IMG/VR virus record: IMGVR_UViG_3300046517_002304
Span: 1 to 64,000 of that record
DNA: 64,000 nt
Direction: 5' to 3' (one strand)
Of the stretch, positions 21,364 to 40,487 are shown one piece after another. The notes under the pieces are model-generated. The model saw nothing but the letters and a program-made list of their open reading frames with translations, searched no databases and was not told the origin of the DNA. The stretch's first letter is position 1, and every line of letters begins with the position of its first letter. The position numbers were made by a program, and so were the translations under genes.

Positions 21364-22539
21364 TTATCCGTCCAATTCTTGTTCATCAACAATATCTTGC
21401 TCTGCTAATGTACTCTGGGATGCAGACGTAGCCTTGCCAAACATATCAATATAATACTGCACATCTGATACATCTTCGGCATCTACAAGCTTAGGGCATT
21501 GTAGCAATACTTCAGCGGGCACATCATTTCTCTCTTGGCTAGATTTAAAGCTAACTTCTTCTCCCCCCGTATATTCTAAACCAACCTTATAGTTTCCTTT
21601 TGACCCAGTTATTCTTCCTGATCTTACTAAAGAATCTAGCATGCCTGAAAATGGAGCAATGCCCATATCAAAAAACAAAAACATAGATTCAACATTTTGA
21701 AATGGCTTAAAGCATTTGTTCTTAACGTTAGAGACATTAACTCTAATACCTATAACATTGTCTAACGAATCTTTAATGCGCTTTGATGCCCTAGTTTGCA
21801 TTCTTAGGCTCGCATAGTAAGGAATTGACGTACCGCCGGTTGGACTTTCTGTCGGACCAAACATTACGCCTATCTTACTTCTTAGCTGGTTAATAAAAAT
21901 TACACTAACATTATTTTTATCTAATACACCGCCTAATACACGAAGCTGCTCTGATATAACTTTTGCGCGCTCCCCTGGACGGGTTACCCCGCCGCCTGCG
22001 GCCTTACGAGCCGCTAGTGATAGGTCCATCATATCCACTTCCACGCTTTCACGCTCACTAGGACTAGCTGCGATTGAATCATAAACTATAACAATCGGTT
22101 TTTCCTTAGCAACCTTTTCTCGTAATACGCGAATAATAGTATGAATCTTAGCAAATCCTTTTTCTAAAGAATCAACTTTTACTATAATTGTTTGCTTCGC
22201 TGACAATCCCGAAACCTTAATGGCAAATTCTTTTGATAAAGAATTCTCTGCATCAATGAAGACCCCAATTCCCCCACACTTTTGAACACCGCGCAGAATG
22301 TTGGTAGCAAATAAAGTTTTGCATGACGACGACATTCCAAACAACTCTATAATTCGTCCGCTTGGTACTCCCCCGCCGCAAAATCGGCCAGAGCACGCAA
22401 AATTAAGAGCAAGATTTCCTGTATCAATCCATGTAGATACACTATCAATCTTATCTAAAATATCTCCGCCAATATCAGCGGCCAATCCTTCAAAATCAAC
22501 TTCTACTTCGTTTCCTTTATCAATTTTCTTTTTTGCCAT
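21364..22539 (-). CDS. uvsX: RecA/UvsX recombinase
   Basis: DTGNLALN, GRIIELFGMSSSCKT, FIDAE, YDSIA, INQLRSKIGVMFG, KNK. Confidence 0.92.
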   Translation of the reverse strand: MAKKKIDKGNEVEVDFEGLAADIGGDILDKIDSVSTWIDTGNLALNFACSGRFCGGGVPSGRIIELFGMSSSCKTLFATNILRGVQKCGGIGVFIDAENSLSKEFAIKVSGLSAKQTIIVKVDSLEKGFAKIHTIIRVLREKVAKEKPIVIVYDSIAASPSERESVEVDMMDLSLAARKAAGGGVTRPGERAKVISEQLRVLGGVLDKNNVSVIFINQLRSKIGVMFGPTESPTGGTSIPYYASLRMQTRASKRIKDSLDNVIGIRVNVSNVKNKCFKPFQNVESMFLFFDMGIAPFSGMLDSLVRSGRITGSKGNYKVGLEYTGGEEVSFKSSQERNDVPAEVLLQCPKLVDAEDVSDVQYYIDMFGKATSASQSTLAEQDIVDEQELDG

Positions 22540-34477: not shown

Positions 34478-35887
34478 TTAGTTAGAGTTTTGTTTAAAAT
34501 TCTTTGGGAGAGAAACATTTTCATTAGTGCTCTGGACAACAGCATTCATTCTATTTGCATATGCTTCGTTAGAAATCTCAACCATATCTAAGCTATCTGT
34601 GCACTTATAGTGAACTAAATATCCACTCCTACCGTCTCTATGTTTGGCTACCCAAATTCTACCGACACCAGCCGACTTTTCTGTAGTTGACTGATTAATT
34701 GACCACAGGGCATCCAGCGGCTTAACAGCATCATACGATCCGGACAAATTACTATCCTGTAAAACAGACCCAGAATTCTGCGCATCCCTAGCGCTTCTAT
34801 TTCCTTGTAGTCCAGTGAAGATAACTATTTTTTCTTCCATGGCCAATGCTCTTAGATCTCGGATAGCAAGATAATAAGACTGATGCATAGGCATAGCTGG
34901 ATCAAAGCTAAGTTCTCCAAGATAGTCTAAACAAATCAAGTCAGGAACAAATTTTTCAATATGTAGCATTGACAGATATGATCTTAACTTTTTAACAGTC
35001 AAAGTACCCGCCGCAAATTGCTTGATGATCAATCTTCGCTCACCTATCGGTCCAACACTACTCGCCGACTCATTAACAGCATCAATTACTATGTCTCTTT
35101 CCTGAGCCAAACTGCCTACGCCTACTCCGCTTAACTGAGAATCCATTCTTAATGCCGTTTTTTCCGCGCTAAGCTCTAGAGTAATATAAAGTACTTTCTT
35201 CCCCTGTGCGCAGTTTGCTATCGCCTGCTTAGAGAGTATTAATGACTTGCCGACGCCAGATGACCCCATTACTGCGGCGCATTCTCCACGACATATTCCG
35301 CCAGCACGCAATCCCTTGTCTATCGTAGGAAATCCGCTAGTAAATGTTTCATTATTATCCTGCATCTTCATCATATTTTCATAACGCTGCTGAACTGTAT
35401 TAAAGTAATCAATACCATCATCATCGTTCTTTTCAACAGTCAAGGCGTCGTTGAAAATCTTGTAAATCTTCTCCCATTTGCCGTCAACTTTTTTCCCCAA
35501 TATATCTGTAGCGTGAACAATCGCTTGTCGCATAGTCTGAATTTTAGTGAACTCTGCTACTTTATCAGTAAGGTATTCTCTGGTTTCAATACCAGCCTCA
35601 TAACAGCTCATTACTGTTCTTAATTCATAAATATAAGCGTCCCTTTTTATATCATCATTCTGAATCTTTTCTTTAATCTCTTGCTCAATATATTCCTTCT
35701 TAGGAACCTGACGATATTTGTCAAAAAACTGCAAGATAATATCACAAATTACTTCATGAGATTTATCTTCAAAGTAAAACGGCTTCACCAAGCTAGAGCT
35801 TTGCTTAAGAAAATAAGGATCTTTCAACATTGCCCCTAGCAACATTTGCTGCATATAAACATCAAACTCGTACTTTTCTTCTATCAT
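34478..35887 (-). CDS. dnaB: DnaB/gp41-like replicative helicase
   Basis: SGFPTID, GSSGVGKS, YITLE, DYL, QGNR, AKHRDG. Confidence 0.9.
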   Translation of the reverse strand: MIEEKYEFDVYMQQMLLGAMLKDPYFLKQSSSLVKPFYFEDKSHEVICDIILQFFDKYRQVPKKEYIEQEIKEKIQNDDIKRDAYIYELRTVMSCYEAGIETREYLTDKVAEFTKIQTMRQAIVHATDILGKKVDGKWEKIYKIFNDALTVEKNDDDGIDYFNTVQQRYENMMKMQDNNETFTSGFPTIDKGLRAGGICRGECAAVMGSSGVGKSLILSKQAIANCAQGKKVLYITLELSAEKTALRMDSQLSGVGVGSLAQERDIVIDAVNESASSVGPIGERRLIIKQFAAGTLTVKKLRSYLSMLHIEKFVPDLICLDYLGELSFDPAMPMHQSYYLAIRDLRALAMEEKIVIFTGLQGNRSARDAQNSGSVLQDSNLSGSYDAVKPLDALWSINQSTTEKSAGVGRIWVAKHRDGRSGYLVHYKCTDSLDMVEISNEAYANRMNAVVQSTNENVSLPKNFKQNSN

Positions 35888-35890
35888 AAT

Positions 35891-36091
35891 TTATTTCTTA
35901 AAACAACCAGCTATTCTTTCGGCACACTTAGGGCAAATAACAAACATATTATCTAACCAATATCCACTTAACGGCTTATTTCTAGATAAATGATTTAGAA
36001 AAACCGTAGCCGTCTTATCTTTACTGTTTCCGCATACTGCACAACTCAGCATAGAGTTTTTGCTCAGGCTTATCCAATTTTCTTCTTTCAT
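35891..36091 (-). CDS. Small Zn-finger protein
   Basis: CAVC..CPKC. Confidence 0.6.
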   Translation of the reverse strand: MKEENWISLSKNSMLSCAVCGNSKDKTATVFLNHLSRNKPLSGYWLDNMFVICPKCAERIAGCFKK

Positions 36092-36092
36092 A

Positions 36093-36275
36093 TTAATTTA
36101 AGAGCACTATGCCTTTTTTAGAATCATCAATTAACTTAATGCCGGTAGAAAACTTAGAAACCCCATGCATTTCTTCAACACTCCTCAGCTTAACTATATC
36201 AAAATTAGACAACAGTAGTACTTCGGCTGTTTCATCACACATCATTAACTTTTCTACCAATTCTTTAACAGTCAT
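36093..36275 (-). CDS. Small phage hypothetical protein
   Basis: MTVKELVEKL start is common in phage small ORFs; GGAG SD. Confidence 0.65.
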   Translation of the reverse strand: MTVKELVEKLMMCDETAEVLLLSNFDIVKLRSVEEMHGVSKFSTGIKLIDDSKKGIVLLN

Positions 36276-36284
36276 GTTGAACTC

Positions 36285-36650
36285 CTAAAACGTAGGTTTC
36301 TTAGACAAATCAATAATTACATCATTCTGACAAGGCGCAGGATTGACCCATGCTTTGCTACTCCCAATCATCGTAGTAGATTCACTCTCCGTCTCAATAA
36401 TACATGGAGTCTTTACAACATGTGGTGAATGATAGTGATATATCATATCGTCGCCAATTTCGCCTATGCCACAAGTAATATTATGCGTCTTGGTCTTTCT
36501 ATTACGCTTTGGCTTATATTCCTGTTCCGCCTTAGCCCAATTCTCTAATTCGTTGCCATCTACACAACCAGAATTAATCCAGTTATAATATGCAGCTTCT
36601 CTAATCGCCTTCTCTTTTTCTTCTAATTTCTTGCCATACTTGGTTTTCAT
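36285..36650 (-). CDS. DUF2934-domain protein
   Basis: IREAAYYNW..G..ENWAKAEQE. Confidence 0.75.
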   Translation of the reverse strand: MKTKYGKKLEEKEKAIREAAYYNWINSGCVDGNELENWAKAEQEYKPKRNRKTKTHNITCGIGEIGDDMIYHYHSPHVVKTPCIIETESESTTMIGSSKAWVNPAPCQNDVIIDLSKKPTF

Positions 36651-36662
36651 AATTCTTTCTTT

Positions 36663-36914
36663 CTACGAAAAATCTGTTTCTAAATCATTATGACAGAAGG
36701 TCGTCGGCTTACTGTCTAACTTAATCTGCTCTTTCTTTTTTGAATAGGCATCTTTAAGCAACTTTTGATACCTATCAAGCTTCATGCTCATGTCTTCAAT
36801 AAAATTTGCATCTTCATCACTGAATTCACACAGCGCTCCATTGTTTGCTCTTTCGGGCGAAACTACATAGTAAAACTGATTACGATCATAATAATCAATA
36901 ATTATTTTTTGCAT
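36663..36914 (-). CDS. Hypothetical protein
   Basis: 83 aa, TAATG-coupled. Confidence 0.6.
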   Translation of the reverse strand: MQKIIIDYYDRNQFYYVVSPERANNGALCEFSDEDANFIEDMSMKLDRYQKLLKDAYSKKKEQIKLDSKPTTFCHNDLETDFS

Positions 36915-37378
36915 TATATCACGAAATCCTTAACTAATTTAATAAAATCTCTATTAGCCAACTTTGCTCTGGGGGCAGTAAGTATTCCGCTGCACTCATT
37001 AACTTGCGTAATCCCGCTGCAATTAAAGTATATGGAGCCAGTACAACAATCTGCATTCCATGGATCAGAATGAACAACTTCACCGTGCCATACAACATTA
37101 TTAAACTTATTAGAAATTACATTAGCCCATTTGATTCCATCGTCACTAAACCATATGTCTATTATGAATTCTGAAGGAGCACTATACTCAGTGGGAATAG
37201 CTCTCAAATCTTCAGAATAGCAGCCTGATACCCATCGGCTAAATGGGAGGCAGTTCCAGAAACCAGAACTAATGTAAAACTTATTATAGCTATCTTCTAA
37301 TTTAGCTGGTGGATTCCATAAAACCAAATCAGAATCTCTTACTACAAACCTGGTTTGCATTATATCACGAAATCCTTA
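36908..37378. repeat. 25-bp exact direct repeats flanking one ORF
   Basis: TTTGCATTATATCACGAAATCCTTA at 36908-36932 and 37354-37378. Confidence 0.92.
36914..37360 (-). CDS. Hypothetical Trp/Cys-rich protein inside the repeat-bounded cassette
   Basis: 148 aa; ends KDFVI like the upstream gene. Confidence 0.65.
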   Translation of the reverse strand: MQTRFVVRDSDLVLWNPPAKLEDSYNKFYISSGFWNCLPFSRWVSGCYSEDLRAIPTEYSAPSEFIIDIWFSDDGIKWANVISNKFNNVVWHGEVVHSDPWNADCCTGSIYFNCSGITQVNECSGILTAPRAKLANRDFIKLVKDFVI

Positions 37379-37902
37379 TCGCTAAGAGAAACTAATCCAA
37401 TCCTAATTCCACTATCCTTGGTCACTTTTTTACCAATATGCTTAGTGGCATTCCAAATAATTGACTTAATATAAATTTCAAATTTCCTGTTAACCAATAG
37501 TTTAGCGCTTACATCTGGAAAAAGCTCTTTGGGAACATATCTATTAAGAATTAAATCAAGCATATTCTCTTGATGATCCCCAAAGGTACGCTTGTTCGCA
37601 CCATGGTGTCTACGATTTTCCCAAAGCCGCTCTAGTTCGCAAACTATACAAAAAATAAACTTATCCTTACAATATGCCTTAGCAATTTCTAATGAATCCT
37701 CAATATATGTCTGCCGCTTAAAATAAACAGCAGCCTTAGTTAAGGCCATTTTTGTTTCTTGAATTACGTCTTCAATTTCTAAGAAACTTCCGCTGTTGTA
37801 ATTGCGTCTTAATAGCTTCCAAGAAGCATCATAACAAAGACGACCATACTTCTTATCTAATAACGCATACTCATCATTAGTTATCGCAAACTTATTCTTC
37901 AT
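37360..37902 (-). CDS. Sigma70 region-2-like protein (possible phage sigma factor)
   Basis: KYGRLCY..EDVIQETKMALTKA...KFEIYIKSIIWN; no region 4 visible. Confidence 0.45.
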   Translation of the reverse strand: MKNKFAITNDEYALLDKKYGRLCYDASWKLLRRNYNSGSFLEIEDVIQETKMALTKAAVYFKRQTYIEDSLEIAKAYCKDKFIFCIVCELERLWENRRHHGANKRTFGDHQENMLDLILNRYVPKELFPDVSAKLLVNRKFEIYIKSIIWNATKHIGKKVTKDSGIRIGLVSLSDKDFVI

Positions 37903-37924
37903 GCTAGATATATCGGTAATAACT

Positions 37925-39145
37925 TTATACTCCTTTAGTTTCGGCTACATTTAGTTTCAACCCAGGGTAAAAATCATCATCTTTCTCCAATACATGAATT
38001 ATACTATTCAAAGTATCTGTATCTCCAGCGTCAAGCTGTACGACATAACCGTCATGAATATTAAACATGATATTTTTGTGTTTGTGGAAAAGTTGAATTA
38101 GTTTATGCTGGCAAACTGTTGCAGCGGCTGACTGTATCAGGAAATTCCCAACCTGATATTTATGATCAACCTTCTTAATTCTACCAAAATAATTCTGCGC
38201 TACCGTGTCGCTATTAACGCTATCCAACCACTTAAAAACATCGGGAATTCTATTTTTTATTAAAGACAAAATCTTAACAACATGCTCCCTGCCTATACCA
38301 GAATTTTCTGATAACGTGTCTGGACCACCACCATAAATAAATGGTAAAAATAATAACTTCATCTTCTTGCGAGATGCAGATGAGCATTCTTGCCTAAACA
38401 AATCTTTGTATAAGTTACAATAAAAATCAGAGCCGTTAATAAGTTTAAGCAACTCTTTGTCTTGTGACAACCACTGTAGAACAGAAACTTCCATATGCTT
38501 GTAATCAACTGTCCAAATTTCCTTATTATATCCACTTGGTTTTATCTTCTCTTTAATTTCCGGCGACAAAGTATGAGGGACAATATATCTTTCATTTACC
38601 TTGCTACACGACATCCTGCCTTGTGACTGCCCTTCAATCTCATAATTAGTATACCGGACATTTTTGCCGACGATTATTTTCATATTCTCTAATGACGGAA
38701 TGACTTCGGTAATCAAAGGAAGATGAACATTTTTATAGACCGATTTCCATGTATCCGGCAACTCTTTAAAAATACCAACGGCATCTAAAAACGTCTCGGG
38801 GCAAGAAACGGGTAAGCCGCAAAAAGCGGCAATTACCTTTAAATCTATAATCTTTCCATCAAATTTAGAAAAACCGTTATCTCCAAATCTATGTTTTATA
38901 TGCGAAACAAATCTCTTAAAATCATATACTAAAATCGTTTTCTGATGAAAGAGTTCTTGCAAAACTGTTAAATTACTTCTAAAACTACCGTCTATTTCAA
39001 AATTAAAACAGTAGTTTTGATTACTCAATTCTAGTTTTCCAGAAAATGTATCTGTGAAATCAACGATTTCTGGAATCGTCCTAAAGAAAAGAACGCCGCT
39101 ATCCTTAAAATGACTAATATGACTCACAAAATCAAATAAAAGCAT
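37925..39145 (-). CDS. Short family A DNA polymerase-like protein
   Basis: GRMS, motif A DYKHME, motif B RKKMKLLFLPFIYG, NFLIQSAAA, motif C IHDG. Confidence 0.8.
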   Translation of the reverse strand: MLLFDFVSHISHFKDSGVLFFRTIPEIVDFTDTFSGKLELSNQNYCFNFEIDGSFRSNLTVLQELFHQKTILVYDFKRFVSHIKHRFGDNGFSKFDGKIIDLKVIAAFCGLPVSCPETFLDAVGIFKELPDTWKSVYKNVHLPLITEVIPSLENMKIIVGKNVRYTNYEIEGQSQGRMSCSKVNERYIVPHTLSPEIKEKIKPSGYNKEIWTVDYKHMEVSVLQWLSQDKELLKLINGSDFYCNLYKDLFRQECSSASRKKMKLLFLPFIYGGGPDTLSENSGIGREHVVKILSLIKNRIPDVFKWLDSVNSDTVAQNYFGRIKKVDHKYQVGNFLIQSAAATVCQHKLIQLFHKHKNIMFNIHDGYVVQLDAGDTDTLNSIIHVLEKDDDFYPGLKLNVAETKGV

Positions 39146-39154
39146 GTGTACCAG

Positions 39155-40279
39155 TTATCGTGAAATTTCCACTGCGACGTTAAGATTCAACTTAAAAAAC
39201 TCATCTTGTATGACGGATGCTATGTATTCTGCGTGTTTGTCTTGTGCTAAGATACAATCATGAACTGTCAATATCTGCACATCTGGATTTTCACTCATTA
39301 TCCTTTTGCAAATCTTATGAATGAATATATCCGACTCAATCTTCTGCAATTCTCTGGCTAAGTTTTTATAATCATCTTTCTTGTAGAACTGGATAGCATC
39401 TGAAATCGTTGGGAAATACTTAGCAAATTTTTTTGCAGTCTTTCTACCAAAGAAAACATTTTTAAATAACCGATTTTTTATATTTTTTTTATCACTTTCA
39501 TTTATTTTATATAATTCAGAACAATGATTGTAGAATACACCCATCTCAGTTAGTTTTCTATATTCTAAAACATCCTGATTATTTTTAATATAATTTTTAT
39601 TAATCAATTTATCAACAAGCAGATTCAATAAAAGAGGCTGACAATTCTTTATATCAATTTGGGTTAACTTTTCGCCATTAATCATTAATTGCTTACGATG
39701 AGATCTTTTAAGAGTTGTAATATTGGTGTGCGTTCTGCCATAAGTATCAACATGCAGATATACTTTTTTATTTTTAATCCAATCCACCACCTTGGCATGA
39801 TGTATATTTAACTCGCCAAAATGACTATCATCAATGCTAGTTTGCTTTAAACACGCATATAAATATTCATAAATATTGCCTTTAGCAGTTAATTTATGAC
39901 GATTTCGCTTCTTTAGCTTCTTAATAAGCACCGCATCATCTACGGAAACAGTTCTATATCCATGTTCGTAAAGTGGAGCAATACGATAATTTTGAGAAAA
40001 TCTCCCAACACTATAGGTTTTATTAACTAAAATAACATCGCAATCTATCAATAATTTTTTGTATTCCAAGTACCTTCTAGTAAACATGTTTTCAAGATAC
40101 TTCCAATGCAGCTTGGCCCAAAGATCATGGTCTCTACCATGCGTCATACCCCGCACACACACCATTTCAACAAACCAATACATGCGCTGCAAATGCTTCT
40201 TAGACTTCAAATGTTTATACTTTTCCGGTATGATATTTTCTAAAATTAAATTTTTAGGAACAAATATTCTGTATTTCAT
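39155..40279 (-). CDS. Divergent superfamily-A polymerase-like protein
   Basis: GRTHTNIT, DIKNCQP, LQKIES, TVHDC; probable start MKYRIF at 40279. Confidence 0.6.
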   Translation of the reverse strand: MKYRIFVPKNLILENIIPEKYKHLKSKKHLQRMYWFVEMVCVRGMTHGRDHDLWAKLHWKYLENMFTRRYLEYKKLLIDCDVILVNKTYSVGRFSQNYRIAPLYEHGYRTVSVDDAVLIKKLKKRNRHKLTAKGNIYEYLYACLKQTSIDDSHFGELNIHHAKVVDWIKNKKVYLHVDTYGRTHTNITTLKRSHRKQLMINGEKLTQIDIKNCQPLLLNLLVDKLINKNYIKNNQDVLEYRKLTEMGVFYNHCSELYKINESDKKNIKNRLFKNVFFGRKTAKKFAKYFPTISDAIQFYKKDDYKNLARELQKIESDIFIHKICKRIMSENPDVQILTVHDCILAQDKHAEYIASVIQDEFFKLNLNVAVEISR

Positions 40280-40487
40280 ACAGTGTACATCGTGCCAAAT
40301 GCATTTTTCCATTAGTGGTATTCGAAAAAAAACACAGGGATGTGTGGCTAATGATTGATAGGACACAATTTAGATCTTTTTAGTACTTTAAGTACCTAGG
40401 ATTTTATTGTACTTTTCTAATATTATTAGTACTTCTGATTTATTAATACAAACATTAATGATTAATCATTGAGAGTACGATAAACAT

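What the first reader, a model, noticed from the sequence alone, without database searches (positions are those of the whole stretch)
36908..37378. A gene precisely bracketed by 25-bp direct repeats spanning stop/start junctions
Seen: both repeats encode ...KDFVI-stop/MQ on the minus strand (TAATG overlap). The 148-aa ORF therefore ends like the upstream sigma-like gene and starts like the downstream gene, and its interior shows no evident similarity to either. Recombination between the repeats would delete 446 bp and leave both neighbours intact and coupled. Inference: a recent scarless cassette insertion (att-like or microhomology-driven) that inherits translational coupling, with no adjacent integrase.
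Basis: partly seen in the sequence, partly recalled or inferred. Interest (0 to 1): 0.65.

Follow-up and report, generated by a model that had tools for sequence, protein, structure and literature searches.

The report
Accessory phage gene flanked by duplicated junction
In a 511-kb soil megaphage, a small accessory gene sits between two exact 25-base copies of the neighbouring gene's end plus the next gene's start. This is most likely the scar of a recombination event that added the gene, a kind of event already described in other phages.

Summary
An exact 25-nt direct repeat lies at 36908-36932 and 37354-37378, 446 nt apart, with no third copy in the 511,233-bp genome. On the minus strand each copy holds an AAGGA, the codons KDFVI, an overlapping TAATG stop/start, and CAAA. 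The arrangement recurs with identical repeats in at least seven other assemblies, so it is not an artefact.

The KDFVI tail is native to the upstream gene, whose relatives end in a matching conserved motif. The 148-aa gene borrowed that tail. It is a real gene from a rare family of 125-207 aa proteins, with a predicted tail-tube/Hcp-like fold. Its own conserved end stops just before the borrowed tail.

Relatives keep the order PolA, sigma-like gene, variable slot (0 to 3.9 kb), DnaB. None carries this gene in the slot.

No empty site or circle junction was found. The genome has no integrase or resolvase but does have a RecA/UvsX-like gene. The repeat is not a recurring motif.

Best reading: recombination added the gene and duplicated the junction, and recombinants that kept all three genes intact were retained. 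Mycobacteriophage Island3 genes 67/68 are a published precedent. An att-like cassette is not supported.

The parts
37354..37378 (-). Repeat copy U: last 5 codons (KDFVI) and stop of the sigma-like gene, overlapping the ATG and first 7 nt of the 148-aa gene. This is the original copy as far as the coding tail is concerned.
   Evidence: The tail aligns with the conserved C-terminal motif SLS[ED]x-D-[YF]-[LV] of the relatives.
36908..36932 (-). Repeat copy D: the same 25 nt, forming the last 5 codons and stop of the 148-aa gene and the ATG and first 7 nt of the 83-aa gene. This is the derived copy of the tail.
   Evidence: The family alignment shows the native C-terminal motif of the 148-aa protein (RDFIKLV, matching [DE]FIxL[TV]) ends just before KDFVI. 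Homologue P0128 stops at that point.
36933..37353 (-). Unique 421-nt body between the repeats: codon 3 (from its second base) to codon 143 of the 148-aa gene.
   Evidence: No similarity to the neighbours. The flanks diverge sharply.
36914..37360 (-). 148-aa accessory gene (gp148), a member of a rare uncharacterised family. Predicted fold is tail-tube/Hcp-like (residues 1-125) plus a C-terminal helix.
   Evidence: The only open frame of six, with median codon score and GC for the genome. HMMER over 1.84 billion representatives finds six small homologues, E 2.6e-7 to 3.4e-4, with 12 invariant columns. AF2 model pLDDT 84.9. Hcp and tube matches in PDB (Z 7.0-7.4), BFVD and ESM Atlas (TM about 0.5). 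No paralogue in the genome.
37360..37902 (-). Conserved 180-aa 'sigma-like' gene. The protein is all-helical, resembles sigma-factor domain 2, and has a disordered last six residues.
   Evidence: Sigma70_r2 only below threshold (E 0.016; 4 of 36 relatives). AF2 pLDDT 87 with residues 175-180 below 50. The best structural matches include many sigma domain 2 entries: SigB, SigE, sigma70 at Z 7.8-8.1 and 23-26% identity. 83 homologous loci at 37-52% identity.
36663..36914 (-). 83-aa gene that starts in repeat copy D. An orphan.
   Evidence: No paralogue in the genome. No homologue in the fetched relatives. Unrelated to the genes that follow family members elsewhere.
35891..36650 (-). The rest of the variable slot: DUF2934 protein (36285-36650), 60-aa gene (36093-36275), 66-aa gene (35891-36091).
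   Evidence: The 60-aa (E 1.3e-14) and DUF2934 (weak, E 4.7e-4) genes have homologues next to DnaB in the closest relative, L012.
34478..35887 (-). DnaB-type replicative helicase, the conserved downstream anchor of the slot.
37925..39145 (-). Family A DNA polymerase-like gene, the conserved upstream anchor.
21658..22431 (-). RecA/UvsX-like recombinase match, the only recombinase family found. It is a candidate enzyme for exchange between short repeats.
   Evidence: E 2.5e-45, above the Pfam cut-off.

Best explanation
The 25-nt repeat is most likely a recombination scar left when the 148-aa accessory gene was gained.

The gene sits in the hypervariable slot that follows a conserved sigma-domain-2-like gene in the replication module of a 511-kb megaphage.

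Shown:
- The repeat is real, unique in the genome and sharp-edged.
- Its coding part (KDFVI plus stop) belongs to the sigma-like gene and was copied onto the end of the 148-aa gene.
- The 148-aa gene's own family-conserved sequence runs from about residue 3 to residue 143.
- The slot varies from 0 to about 3.9 kb among relatives.

Inferred:
- DNA carrying the 148-aa gene was joined into the ancestral junction between the sigma-like and 83-aa genes by two exchange points on the recipient that lay 25 nt apart. The interval between them was therefore duplicated.
- One exchange used the shared ATGCAAA at the two gene starts.
- The other joined the 3' end of the incoming gene in frame to the last five codons of the sigma-like gene.
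- Recombinants of this shape are the ones selection keeps. The sigma-like gene stays intact, the new gene gets a stop, and the new gene and the 83-aa gene each get the same AAGGA-12 nt-TAATG coupled start.
- An equivalent route is a single crossover between a small circular or concatemeric copy carrying the same 25-mer and the resident junction.

The repeats are now a substrate for general recombination (a RecA/UvsX-like gene is present). That would delete exactly 446 bp and restore the two-gene junction, but this has not been observed.
For: - Repeat exact, only two copies, sharp edges.
- Both copies present, at least 99.96% identical, in contigs from at least 7 further samples or runs, including a haplotype with a 30-nt PolA indel.
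- Tail native to the sigma-like gene: the C-terminal motif is conserved in about 70 relatives.
- gp148 is a complete family member whose native end precedes the tail.
- Conserved PolA, sigma-like, variable slot, DnaB synteny. 29 of 49 loci have under 310 nt between the sigma-like and DnaB matches, the others up to 3.9 kb, and none holds gp148 or gp83 homologues.
- Family members lie in unrelated contexts elsewhere.
- No integrase or resolvase, RecA-like present.
- Overlapping stop/start junctions are common in this genome (246 of 651 same-strand junctions).
- Published precedent with the same anatomy: Island3 genes 67/68 share about 60 bp at their 3' ends, gp68 is an orphan absent from the sister phage Brujita, and Brujita has one recombinant copy (PMC3029335).
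- Short-repeat exchange around orphan genes in T4-type phages: PMC2839356.
Against: - No empty-site allele and no donor were found, so the direction (gain here rather than loss elsewhere) rests on distant relatives with only 37-52% identity in the sigma-like protein.
- No close relative of this phage exists in the collections searched.
- The gene is compositionally indistinguishable from the genome, so there is no sign of recent foreign origin.
- The exact path (two illegitimate joints, unequal crossover between two variants, or circle integration) cannot be told apart.
- The shared CAAA after the ATG is either microhomology that was used or a coincidence of roughly 1 in 100-250 (my estimate).
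Confidence: 0.62

Rival explanations
1. The gp148 family are stop-less mobile cassettes. They integrate at the 3' ends of genes by a dedicated (att-like or trans-acting) mechanism that duplicates the target's last codons, stop and start region.
For: - The unit is exactly one gene, and its circular form would close on itself at the TAATG.
- A second family member, P0125 on the 756-bp contig L099, ends in a 12-nt string (last three codons plus stop) that also lies upstream of it, at the end of an open frame, 15/16 identical over 16 nt.
- P0125 extends six residues beyond where its nearest homologue P0127 stops.
- Family members occur in unrelated genomic contexts.
Against: - No tyrosine or serine recombinase in the complete genome.
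- The 25-mer is not recurrent.
- Four other family loci show no comparable flanking repeat.
- The L099 repeat is only p about 0.01 by an offset-free shuffle test before correcting for 5 loci. Its 'upstream gene' is just 14 open codons at a contig edge and could be a tandem paralogue.
- There are no inverted repeats and no shared RNA or DNA structure at the ends.
Confidence: 0.09
2. The three genes were already adjacent. A short-patch gene conversion or template switch later copied the 25-nt upstream junction onto the downstream junction, possibly favoured because it improves coupled translation of the 83-aa gene.
For: - The patch is sharp-edged and consists exactly of a translation-initiation region: AAGGA, spacer, TAATG.
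- Gene tails in this genome commonly double as the ribosome-binding site for the next gene.
Against: - There is no flanking homology to prime a conversion.
- The patch would have to replace a stop and a start in frame at once.
- The motif is not reused anywhere else in 895 gene starts.
Confidence: 0.12
3. Tandem duplication of a 446-bp segment spanning the junction between the sigma-like and 83-aa genes created a chimeric ORF that then diverged.
For: The ORF starts like the downstream gene and ends like the upstream gene, the topology a junction-spanning tandem duplication gives.
Against: - The interior has no similarity to either neighbour at protein or DNA level.
- It belongs to an independent protein family with homologues elsewhere.
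- 25/25 identity next to complete divergence is not how duplicates decay.
Confidence: 0.02
4. Chance match or assembly artefact.
For: None beyond the fact that the record is a metagenome assembly.
Against: - A 25-nt exact match in register with two adjacent start codons is unique in the genome.
- Single contigs from independent samples and two assemblers span both copies, for example X2 record 5 covering 36519-37998.
Confidence: 0.01

Closest known systems
Mycobacteriophage Island3 genes 67/68 versus Brujita (Pope et al. 2011, PLoS One 6:e16329; PMC3029335, read)
   Same: - A small orphan gene sits directly after another gene and shares that gene's C-terminal residues and 3'-end nucleotides as a direct repeat.
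- Recombination between the copies gives a scarless single-copy form.
- The authors attribute it to general recombination at short boundary sequences.
   Different: - There the repeat is about 50-60 bp (18 residues), and the single-copy sister genome is known.
- Here it is 25 nt and 5 residues, it also spans the overlapping stop/start and 4 nt of the next gene, and no single-copy genome is known.
- The host phage here is a 511-kb uncultured megaphage.
PeSL cassettes of T4-type phages (Arbiol et al. 2010, PMC2839356; Comeau et al. 2014, PMC4122927, listed)
   Same: - Short repeated expression signals flank orphan genes in hyperplastic regions.
- Exchanges were mapped between the Shine-Dalgarno sequence, the -10 box and the ATG.
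- They generate deletions, insertions and mini-circles without any site-specific recombinase.
   Different: - PeSLs are intergenic promoter plus stem-loop motifs present in many copies.
- Here there are only two copies, no stem-loop and no called promoter.
- Here the repeat is mostly coding sequence.
Boundary-sequence and illegitimate-recombination models of phage mosaicism, as summarised in PMC3029335
   Same: Joints lie at gene boundaries, and selection keeps recombinants with intact genes.
   Different: Most such joints leave no duplication. Here the two recipient breakpoints overlap by 25 nt.
MPME ultra-small mobile elements of mycobacteriophages (PMC3029335)
   Same: The unit is about 440 bp and holds one small ORF, in a phage genome.
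   Different: MPMEs have terminal inverted repeats, add 6 bp on insertion, and occur as identical copies at several sites and in several genomes. None of this is seen here.

Membership tests
Short direct-repeat (boundary-sequence) flanked accessory gene, Island3 gp67/gp68 type | The inserted small gene shares its C-terminal codons, as an identical nucleotide repeat, with the gene immediately upstream. | tested here: met
   25/25 nt including KDFVI and the stop. The tail is native to the upstream gene and additional to the family end of gp148.
Short direct-repeat (boundary-sequence) flanked accessory gene, Island3 gp67/gp68 type | The gene is absent from related genomes at that position. | tested here: met
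   No gp148 homologue in the slot of the related loci examined (83 loci, 51 of them reaching DnaB). These relatives are distant (37-52% identity in the sigma-like protein).
Short direct-repeat (boundary-sequence) flanked accessory gene, Island3 gp67/gp68 type | A closely related genome carries the single-copy (recombinant or empty) junction. | tested here: inconclusive
   Not found in contigs of 4 runs, in 7-9 contigs carrying the identical neighbour proteins, or in IMG/VR by exact junction search. No close but non-identical relative exists in these collections, and raw reads were not available.
PeSL regulatory cassette | Many copies per genome, clustered in hyperplastic regions. | tested here: not met
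   Two copies only. The next best match is 18/25.
PeSL regulatory cassette | A sigma70-type promoter plus a stem-loop terminator. | tested here: not met
   Only a TGnTATAAT-like string overlapping the ATG. No promoter or terminator was called at the repeats, and the two copies share no structure.
Site-specific (att / integron-type) cassette | A tyrosine or serine recombinase is available in the element or genome. | tested here: not met
   PF00589 and PF00239 give no hit in the complete genome, while the control genomes do. A host enzyme cannot be excluded.
Site-specific (att / integron-type) cassette | A recurrent core site at several cassettes or in relatives. | tested here: not met
Transposable element (IS / MITE / MPME) | Terminal inverted repeats, multiple copies, a transposase or a known non-autonomous family. 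| tested here: not met
   No inverted repeats at the ends. Single copy. The protein has a tail-tube/Hcp-like predicted fold, not a transposase fold.
Sigma factor, region 2 (the upstream 180-aa gene) | A Pfam Sigma70_r2 match above the gathering score. | tested here: not met
   15.4 bits against a cut-off of 24. Sub-threshold in 4 of 36 relatives. No PDB sequence hit.
Sigma factor, region 2 (the upstream 180-aa gene) | The sigma domain 2 fold. | tested here: inconclusive
   The top structural matches are mostly sigma domain 2 (Z 7.8-8.1, 70-79 residues, 23-26% identity). Z below about 13 is not decisive for helical proteins.
Tail-tube / Hcp fold (gp148) | Structural match to tube proteins. | tested here: inconclusive
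   Consistent hits in three libraries, but Z is at most 7.4 and TM about 0.5. The model comes from a 7-sequence alignment at pLDDT 84.9, and two of the five models were poor.

The most novel reading that the evidence does not exclude
The gp148 family could be a new class of minimal, stop-less mobile genes of large phages. They would insert at the 3' ends of resident genes and duplicate the target's last codons, stop and translation-initiation region, so acquiring a terminator codon and coupled translation from the host gene. The window would be one instance and contig L099 (P0125) a second, older one.
Probability: 0.08. Interest if true: 0.7.

Novelty: new member of a known kind. Interest (0 to 1): 0.3.

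Why it matters
This is a clean, unusually legible example of how giant phage genomes gain small orphan genes without breaking operons. The joint duplicates a complete stop/start junction. The old gene therefore keeps its end, and the new gene and the next gene both get the same coupled start.

It extends to an uncultured 511-kb megaphage a mechanism documented in mycobacteriophages and T4-type phages.

It marks the slot after the sigma-like gene as a gene-turnover hotspot across a widespread clade.

It also offers a simple testable prediction: a precise 446-bp deletion and a reciprocal circle, at low frequency.

It does not by itself reveal a new mechanism.

Tried and rejected
Searches for relatives or functions that found nothing useful:
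- blastn of the region against 50,697 phage records: no match.
- Pfam and PHROGs on gp148 and gp83: nothing.
- Word-index protein search: gp148 finds only itself, and the sigma-like protein finds nothing.
- IMG/VR scans with gp148, the sigma-like protein, DnaB and family alignments: only fragments of the same phage, plus one distant contig.
- GTDB genome contigs: no family member.
- ESM Atlas by sequence features: no usable lead, and the Atlas's own model is poor.

Searches for alternative forms:
- Exact empty-site and circle or tandem junction strings in IMG/VR: none.
- Logan contigs of four runs: no joints, indels or variants across 35000-39500. These are contigs at 3-14x depth, so rare forms would be invisible.

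Tests of the repeat itself:
- Degenerate extension of the repeat into its flanks: not significant.
- Shared RNA structure of the two junctions: none. Only the upstream junction folds, z -2.55, and it uses unique sequence.
- Promoter and terminator scan: no enrichment and no site at the repeats.

Tests of generality:
- A genome-wide excess of neighbouring genes with identical tails looked promising (7 observed against 0.6 expected at 9 nt or more). It is explained by purine-rich KK/KE/ER-plus-TAA tails that serve as ribosome-binding sites, and by one paralogue pair.
- gp83 is not a conserved partner of the gp148 family.
- The Kelch-repeat hits in the HMMER search match only a short D-x-W-x-S-x-D-G-x-x-W motif and are not taken as homology.

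Full report
**Setting.** The window is the first 64 kb of a 511,233-bp IMG/VR virus record with 127-bp direct terminal repeats, rated 100% complete. It comes from soil and rhizosphere metagenomes. The region of interest lies in a minus-strand replication block:
- family-A DNA polymerase-like gene, 37925-39145
- 180-aa gene, 37360-37902
- 148-aa gene, 36914-37360
- 83-aa gene, 36663-36914
- DUF2934 gene, 36285-36650
- two tiny genes, 36093-36275 and 35891-36091
- DnaB helicase, 34478-35887

**Observation.** The repeat finder gives two identical 25-nt copies at 36908-36932 and 37354-37378, 446 nt apart.
- On the minus strand each copy contains an AAGGA, then 12 nt, then an ATG that overlaps the preceding TAA. 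It encodes KDFVI-stop and then M-Q.
- Only these two copies exist in the genome, even allowing 3 mismatches. The next best approximate match is 18/25.
- I compared all 895 crude gene starts in register. This pair is the second-longest match. The other matches of 16 nt or more are nearly all a TAGTTATCC motif family at 260-395 kb.
- Beyond the 25 nt the flanks are no more alike than shuffled sequence.
- The 148-aa protein resembles neither neighbour.

**Not an artefact.**
- Both repeat copies are present, in sequence 99.96-100% identical to the window, in two other IMG/VR contigs and in JGI and Logan contigs from further samples.
- One of those samples carries a haplotype with a 30-nt in-frame deletion in the polymerase-like gene.
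- Contigs of four sequencing runs also match. In run X2 one contig spans 36519-37998. No joints or indels were reported.

**Which copy is the original.** The 180-aa gene has homologues in 83 fetched loci at 37-52% identity.
- Their C-termini carry a conserved motif, V-S-L-S-[ED]-[FY]-D-Y-L. The window's S-L-S-D-K-D-F-V-I aligns with it.
- The KDFVI codons are therefore native to that gene, and the copy at the end of the 148-aa gene is derived.
- In the structure model these last residues are disordered.

**What the 148-aa gene is.**
- It is the only open frame of the six, and its codon score and GC are at the genome median.
- Pfam, PHROGs and the word-index search find nothing.
- HMMER against 1.84 billion representatives finds six small proteins of 125-207 aa, with E from 2.6e-7 to 3.4e-4. 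They share 12 invariant positions with it.
- The alignment covers residues of about 3 to 143. The family's C-terminal motif [DE]-F-I-x-L-[TV] matches R-D-F-I-K-L-V. Homologue P0128 ends exactly there, so the five borrowed residues are an extension.
- An AlphaFold model from this shallow alignment has pLDDT 84.9. It consistently but weakly matches Hcp and tail-tube proteins in PDB (Z 7.0-7.4), BFVD and the ESM Atlas (TM about 0.5). I treat this as a lead on fold only.
- Homologues lie in unrelated contexts: near a UvrD helicase and an RF-1-like gene, among DUF6745 genes, or in arrays of tiny genes.
- The genome has no paralogue.

**The slot.** Across the relatives the order polymerase, 180-aa gene, DnaB, 159-aa gene is conserved. 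The distance between the 180-aa and DnaB matches ranges from about 40 nt to about 3.9 kb.
- 29 of 49 loci have under 310 nt. In the window the distance is about 1.47 kb, holding five small genes.
- No relative has a gp148 or gp83 homologue there.
- None has a duplicated junction. The longest match between the junction and the 5 kb downstream is 8-12 nt, about the same as the 8-13 nt found in the upstream control.
- The closest relative by DnaB (53% identity, contig L012) shares the 60-aa gene and, weakly, the DUF2934 gene next to DnaB. These may therefore be older residents of the slot.

**Mechanism.**
- Site-specific integration is not supported. The genome has no tyrosine or serine recombinase family hit, the 25-mer does not recur, and the ends have no inverted repeats or shared structure.
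- A RecA/UvsX-like gene is present at 21658-22431.
- Tandem duplication followed by divergence is contradicted by the independent family membership of the body.
- The simplest account is inference. The gene was joined in by two exchanges whose positions on the recipient overlapped by 25 nt, or equivalently by an unequal crossover between two variants or a single crossover with a small circle carrying the 25-mer.
- Selection would then retain the product in which the 180-aa gene keeps its end, the incoming gene gains a stop, and both it and the 83-aa gene get the same coupled start.
- Overlapping stop/start junctions are normal in this genome, at 246 of 651 same-strand junctions.

**Comparison with known cases.**
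- The same anatomy has been published for mycobacteriophage Island3. Orphan gene 68 shares about 60 bp and 18 C-terminal residues with upstream gene 67. The sister phage Brujita has one recombinant copy. The authors ascribe this to general recombination at short boundary sequences (PMC3029335).
- PeSL-mediated shuffling and mini-circles around orphan genes in T4-type phages are functionally similar (PMC2839356). PeSLs, however, are multi-copy promoter-terminator motifs, which this repeat is not.

**A loose end.** On the 756-bp contig L099, family member P0125 ends with a 12-nt string (its last three codons plus stop). The same string occurs 667 nt upstream, at the end of an open frame that runs off the contig. 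The match is 15/16 over 16 nt.
- P0125 extends six residues past the point where its nearest homologue stops.
- This could be a second instance of the same architecture. The offset-free shuffle test gives only p about 0.01 among five loci tested. The upstream frame is unverified and could be a paralogue. Four other family loci show nothing.
- I keep it as the basis of the low-probability novel reading.

**Limits.**
- No empty-site or circular form was seen. Only contigs at 3-14x depth were available, and every contig found belongs to essentially one strain.
- The age and direction of the event therefore rest on distant comparisons.

**Verdict.** The feature is real and well defined. It is best read as a recombination scar of accessory-gene gain at a hotspot, and so a new example of a known kind rather than a new mechanism.

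Noticed in passing
Outside the window: G000:C1 about 260000-395000, minus strand (for example gene starts at 284176, 286475, 287808, 289935, 318140, 325792): Dozens of small genes are preceded by a conserved motif, TAGTTATCC(A/G)T, about 19-23 nt upstream of the ATG. It looks like a phage-specific promoter or operator family. Two genes (265473-265871 and 269636-270238) share an identical 42-nt start region.
   Followed up: partly
window 37998-38027 (-), inside the polymerase-like gene: A 30-nt in-frame indel polymorphism. Ten codons (GDTDTLNSII) present in the window are absent from contig Ga0495464_0000777 (L103/L106), which is otherwise 100% identical. No flanking direct repeat is visible.
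   Followed up: partly
L099:34-45 and 701-712: A 12-nt exact repeat lies in register with the stop of gp148-family gene P0125 and with the end of the open frame upstream of it. This may be a second junction-duplication case.
   Followed up: partly
L015:1431-2003: The sigma-like homologue on contig JACCDR012593947.1 has one in-frame stop at a conserved position. It could be stop-codon recoding, a pseudogene or a sequencing error.
   Followed up: no
window 39155-40366 (-): The 403-aa ORF upstream of the polymerase-like gene has no family hit. By eye it carries polymerase-A-like motifs (a GRTHTN stretch and TVHDCIL). It matches only 2 of the related loci, which instead have a roughly 494-aa gene there.
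   Followed up: no
window 37360-37902 (-): The conserved 180-aa protein between the polymerase and the helicase models as an all-helical fold (pLDDT 87). Its best structural matches are sigma-factor domain 2 (Z about 8, 23-26% identity), although Pfam is below threshold. It may be a minimal phage sigma-like factor, widespread in large-phage contigs from many environments.
   Followed up: partly
whole genome G000: Neighbouring same-strand genes share identical purine-rich tails (KK, KE or ER plus TAA) far more often than random gene pairs. This is explained by gene ends doubling as the ribosome-binding site of the next gene.
   Followed up: yes
Outside the window: G000:C1 133000-134700 and 462300-463900; 130400-132700: A diverged long repeat pair lies about 329 kb apart, with many exact blocks of 20-75 nt. 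An internally repetitive stretch lies inside a very large minus-strand gene (127085-134827) (the gene coordinates appear).
   Followed up: no
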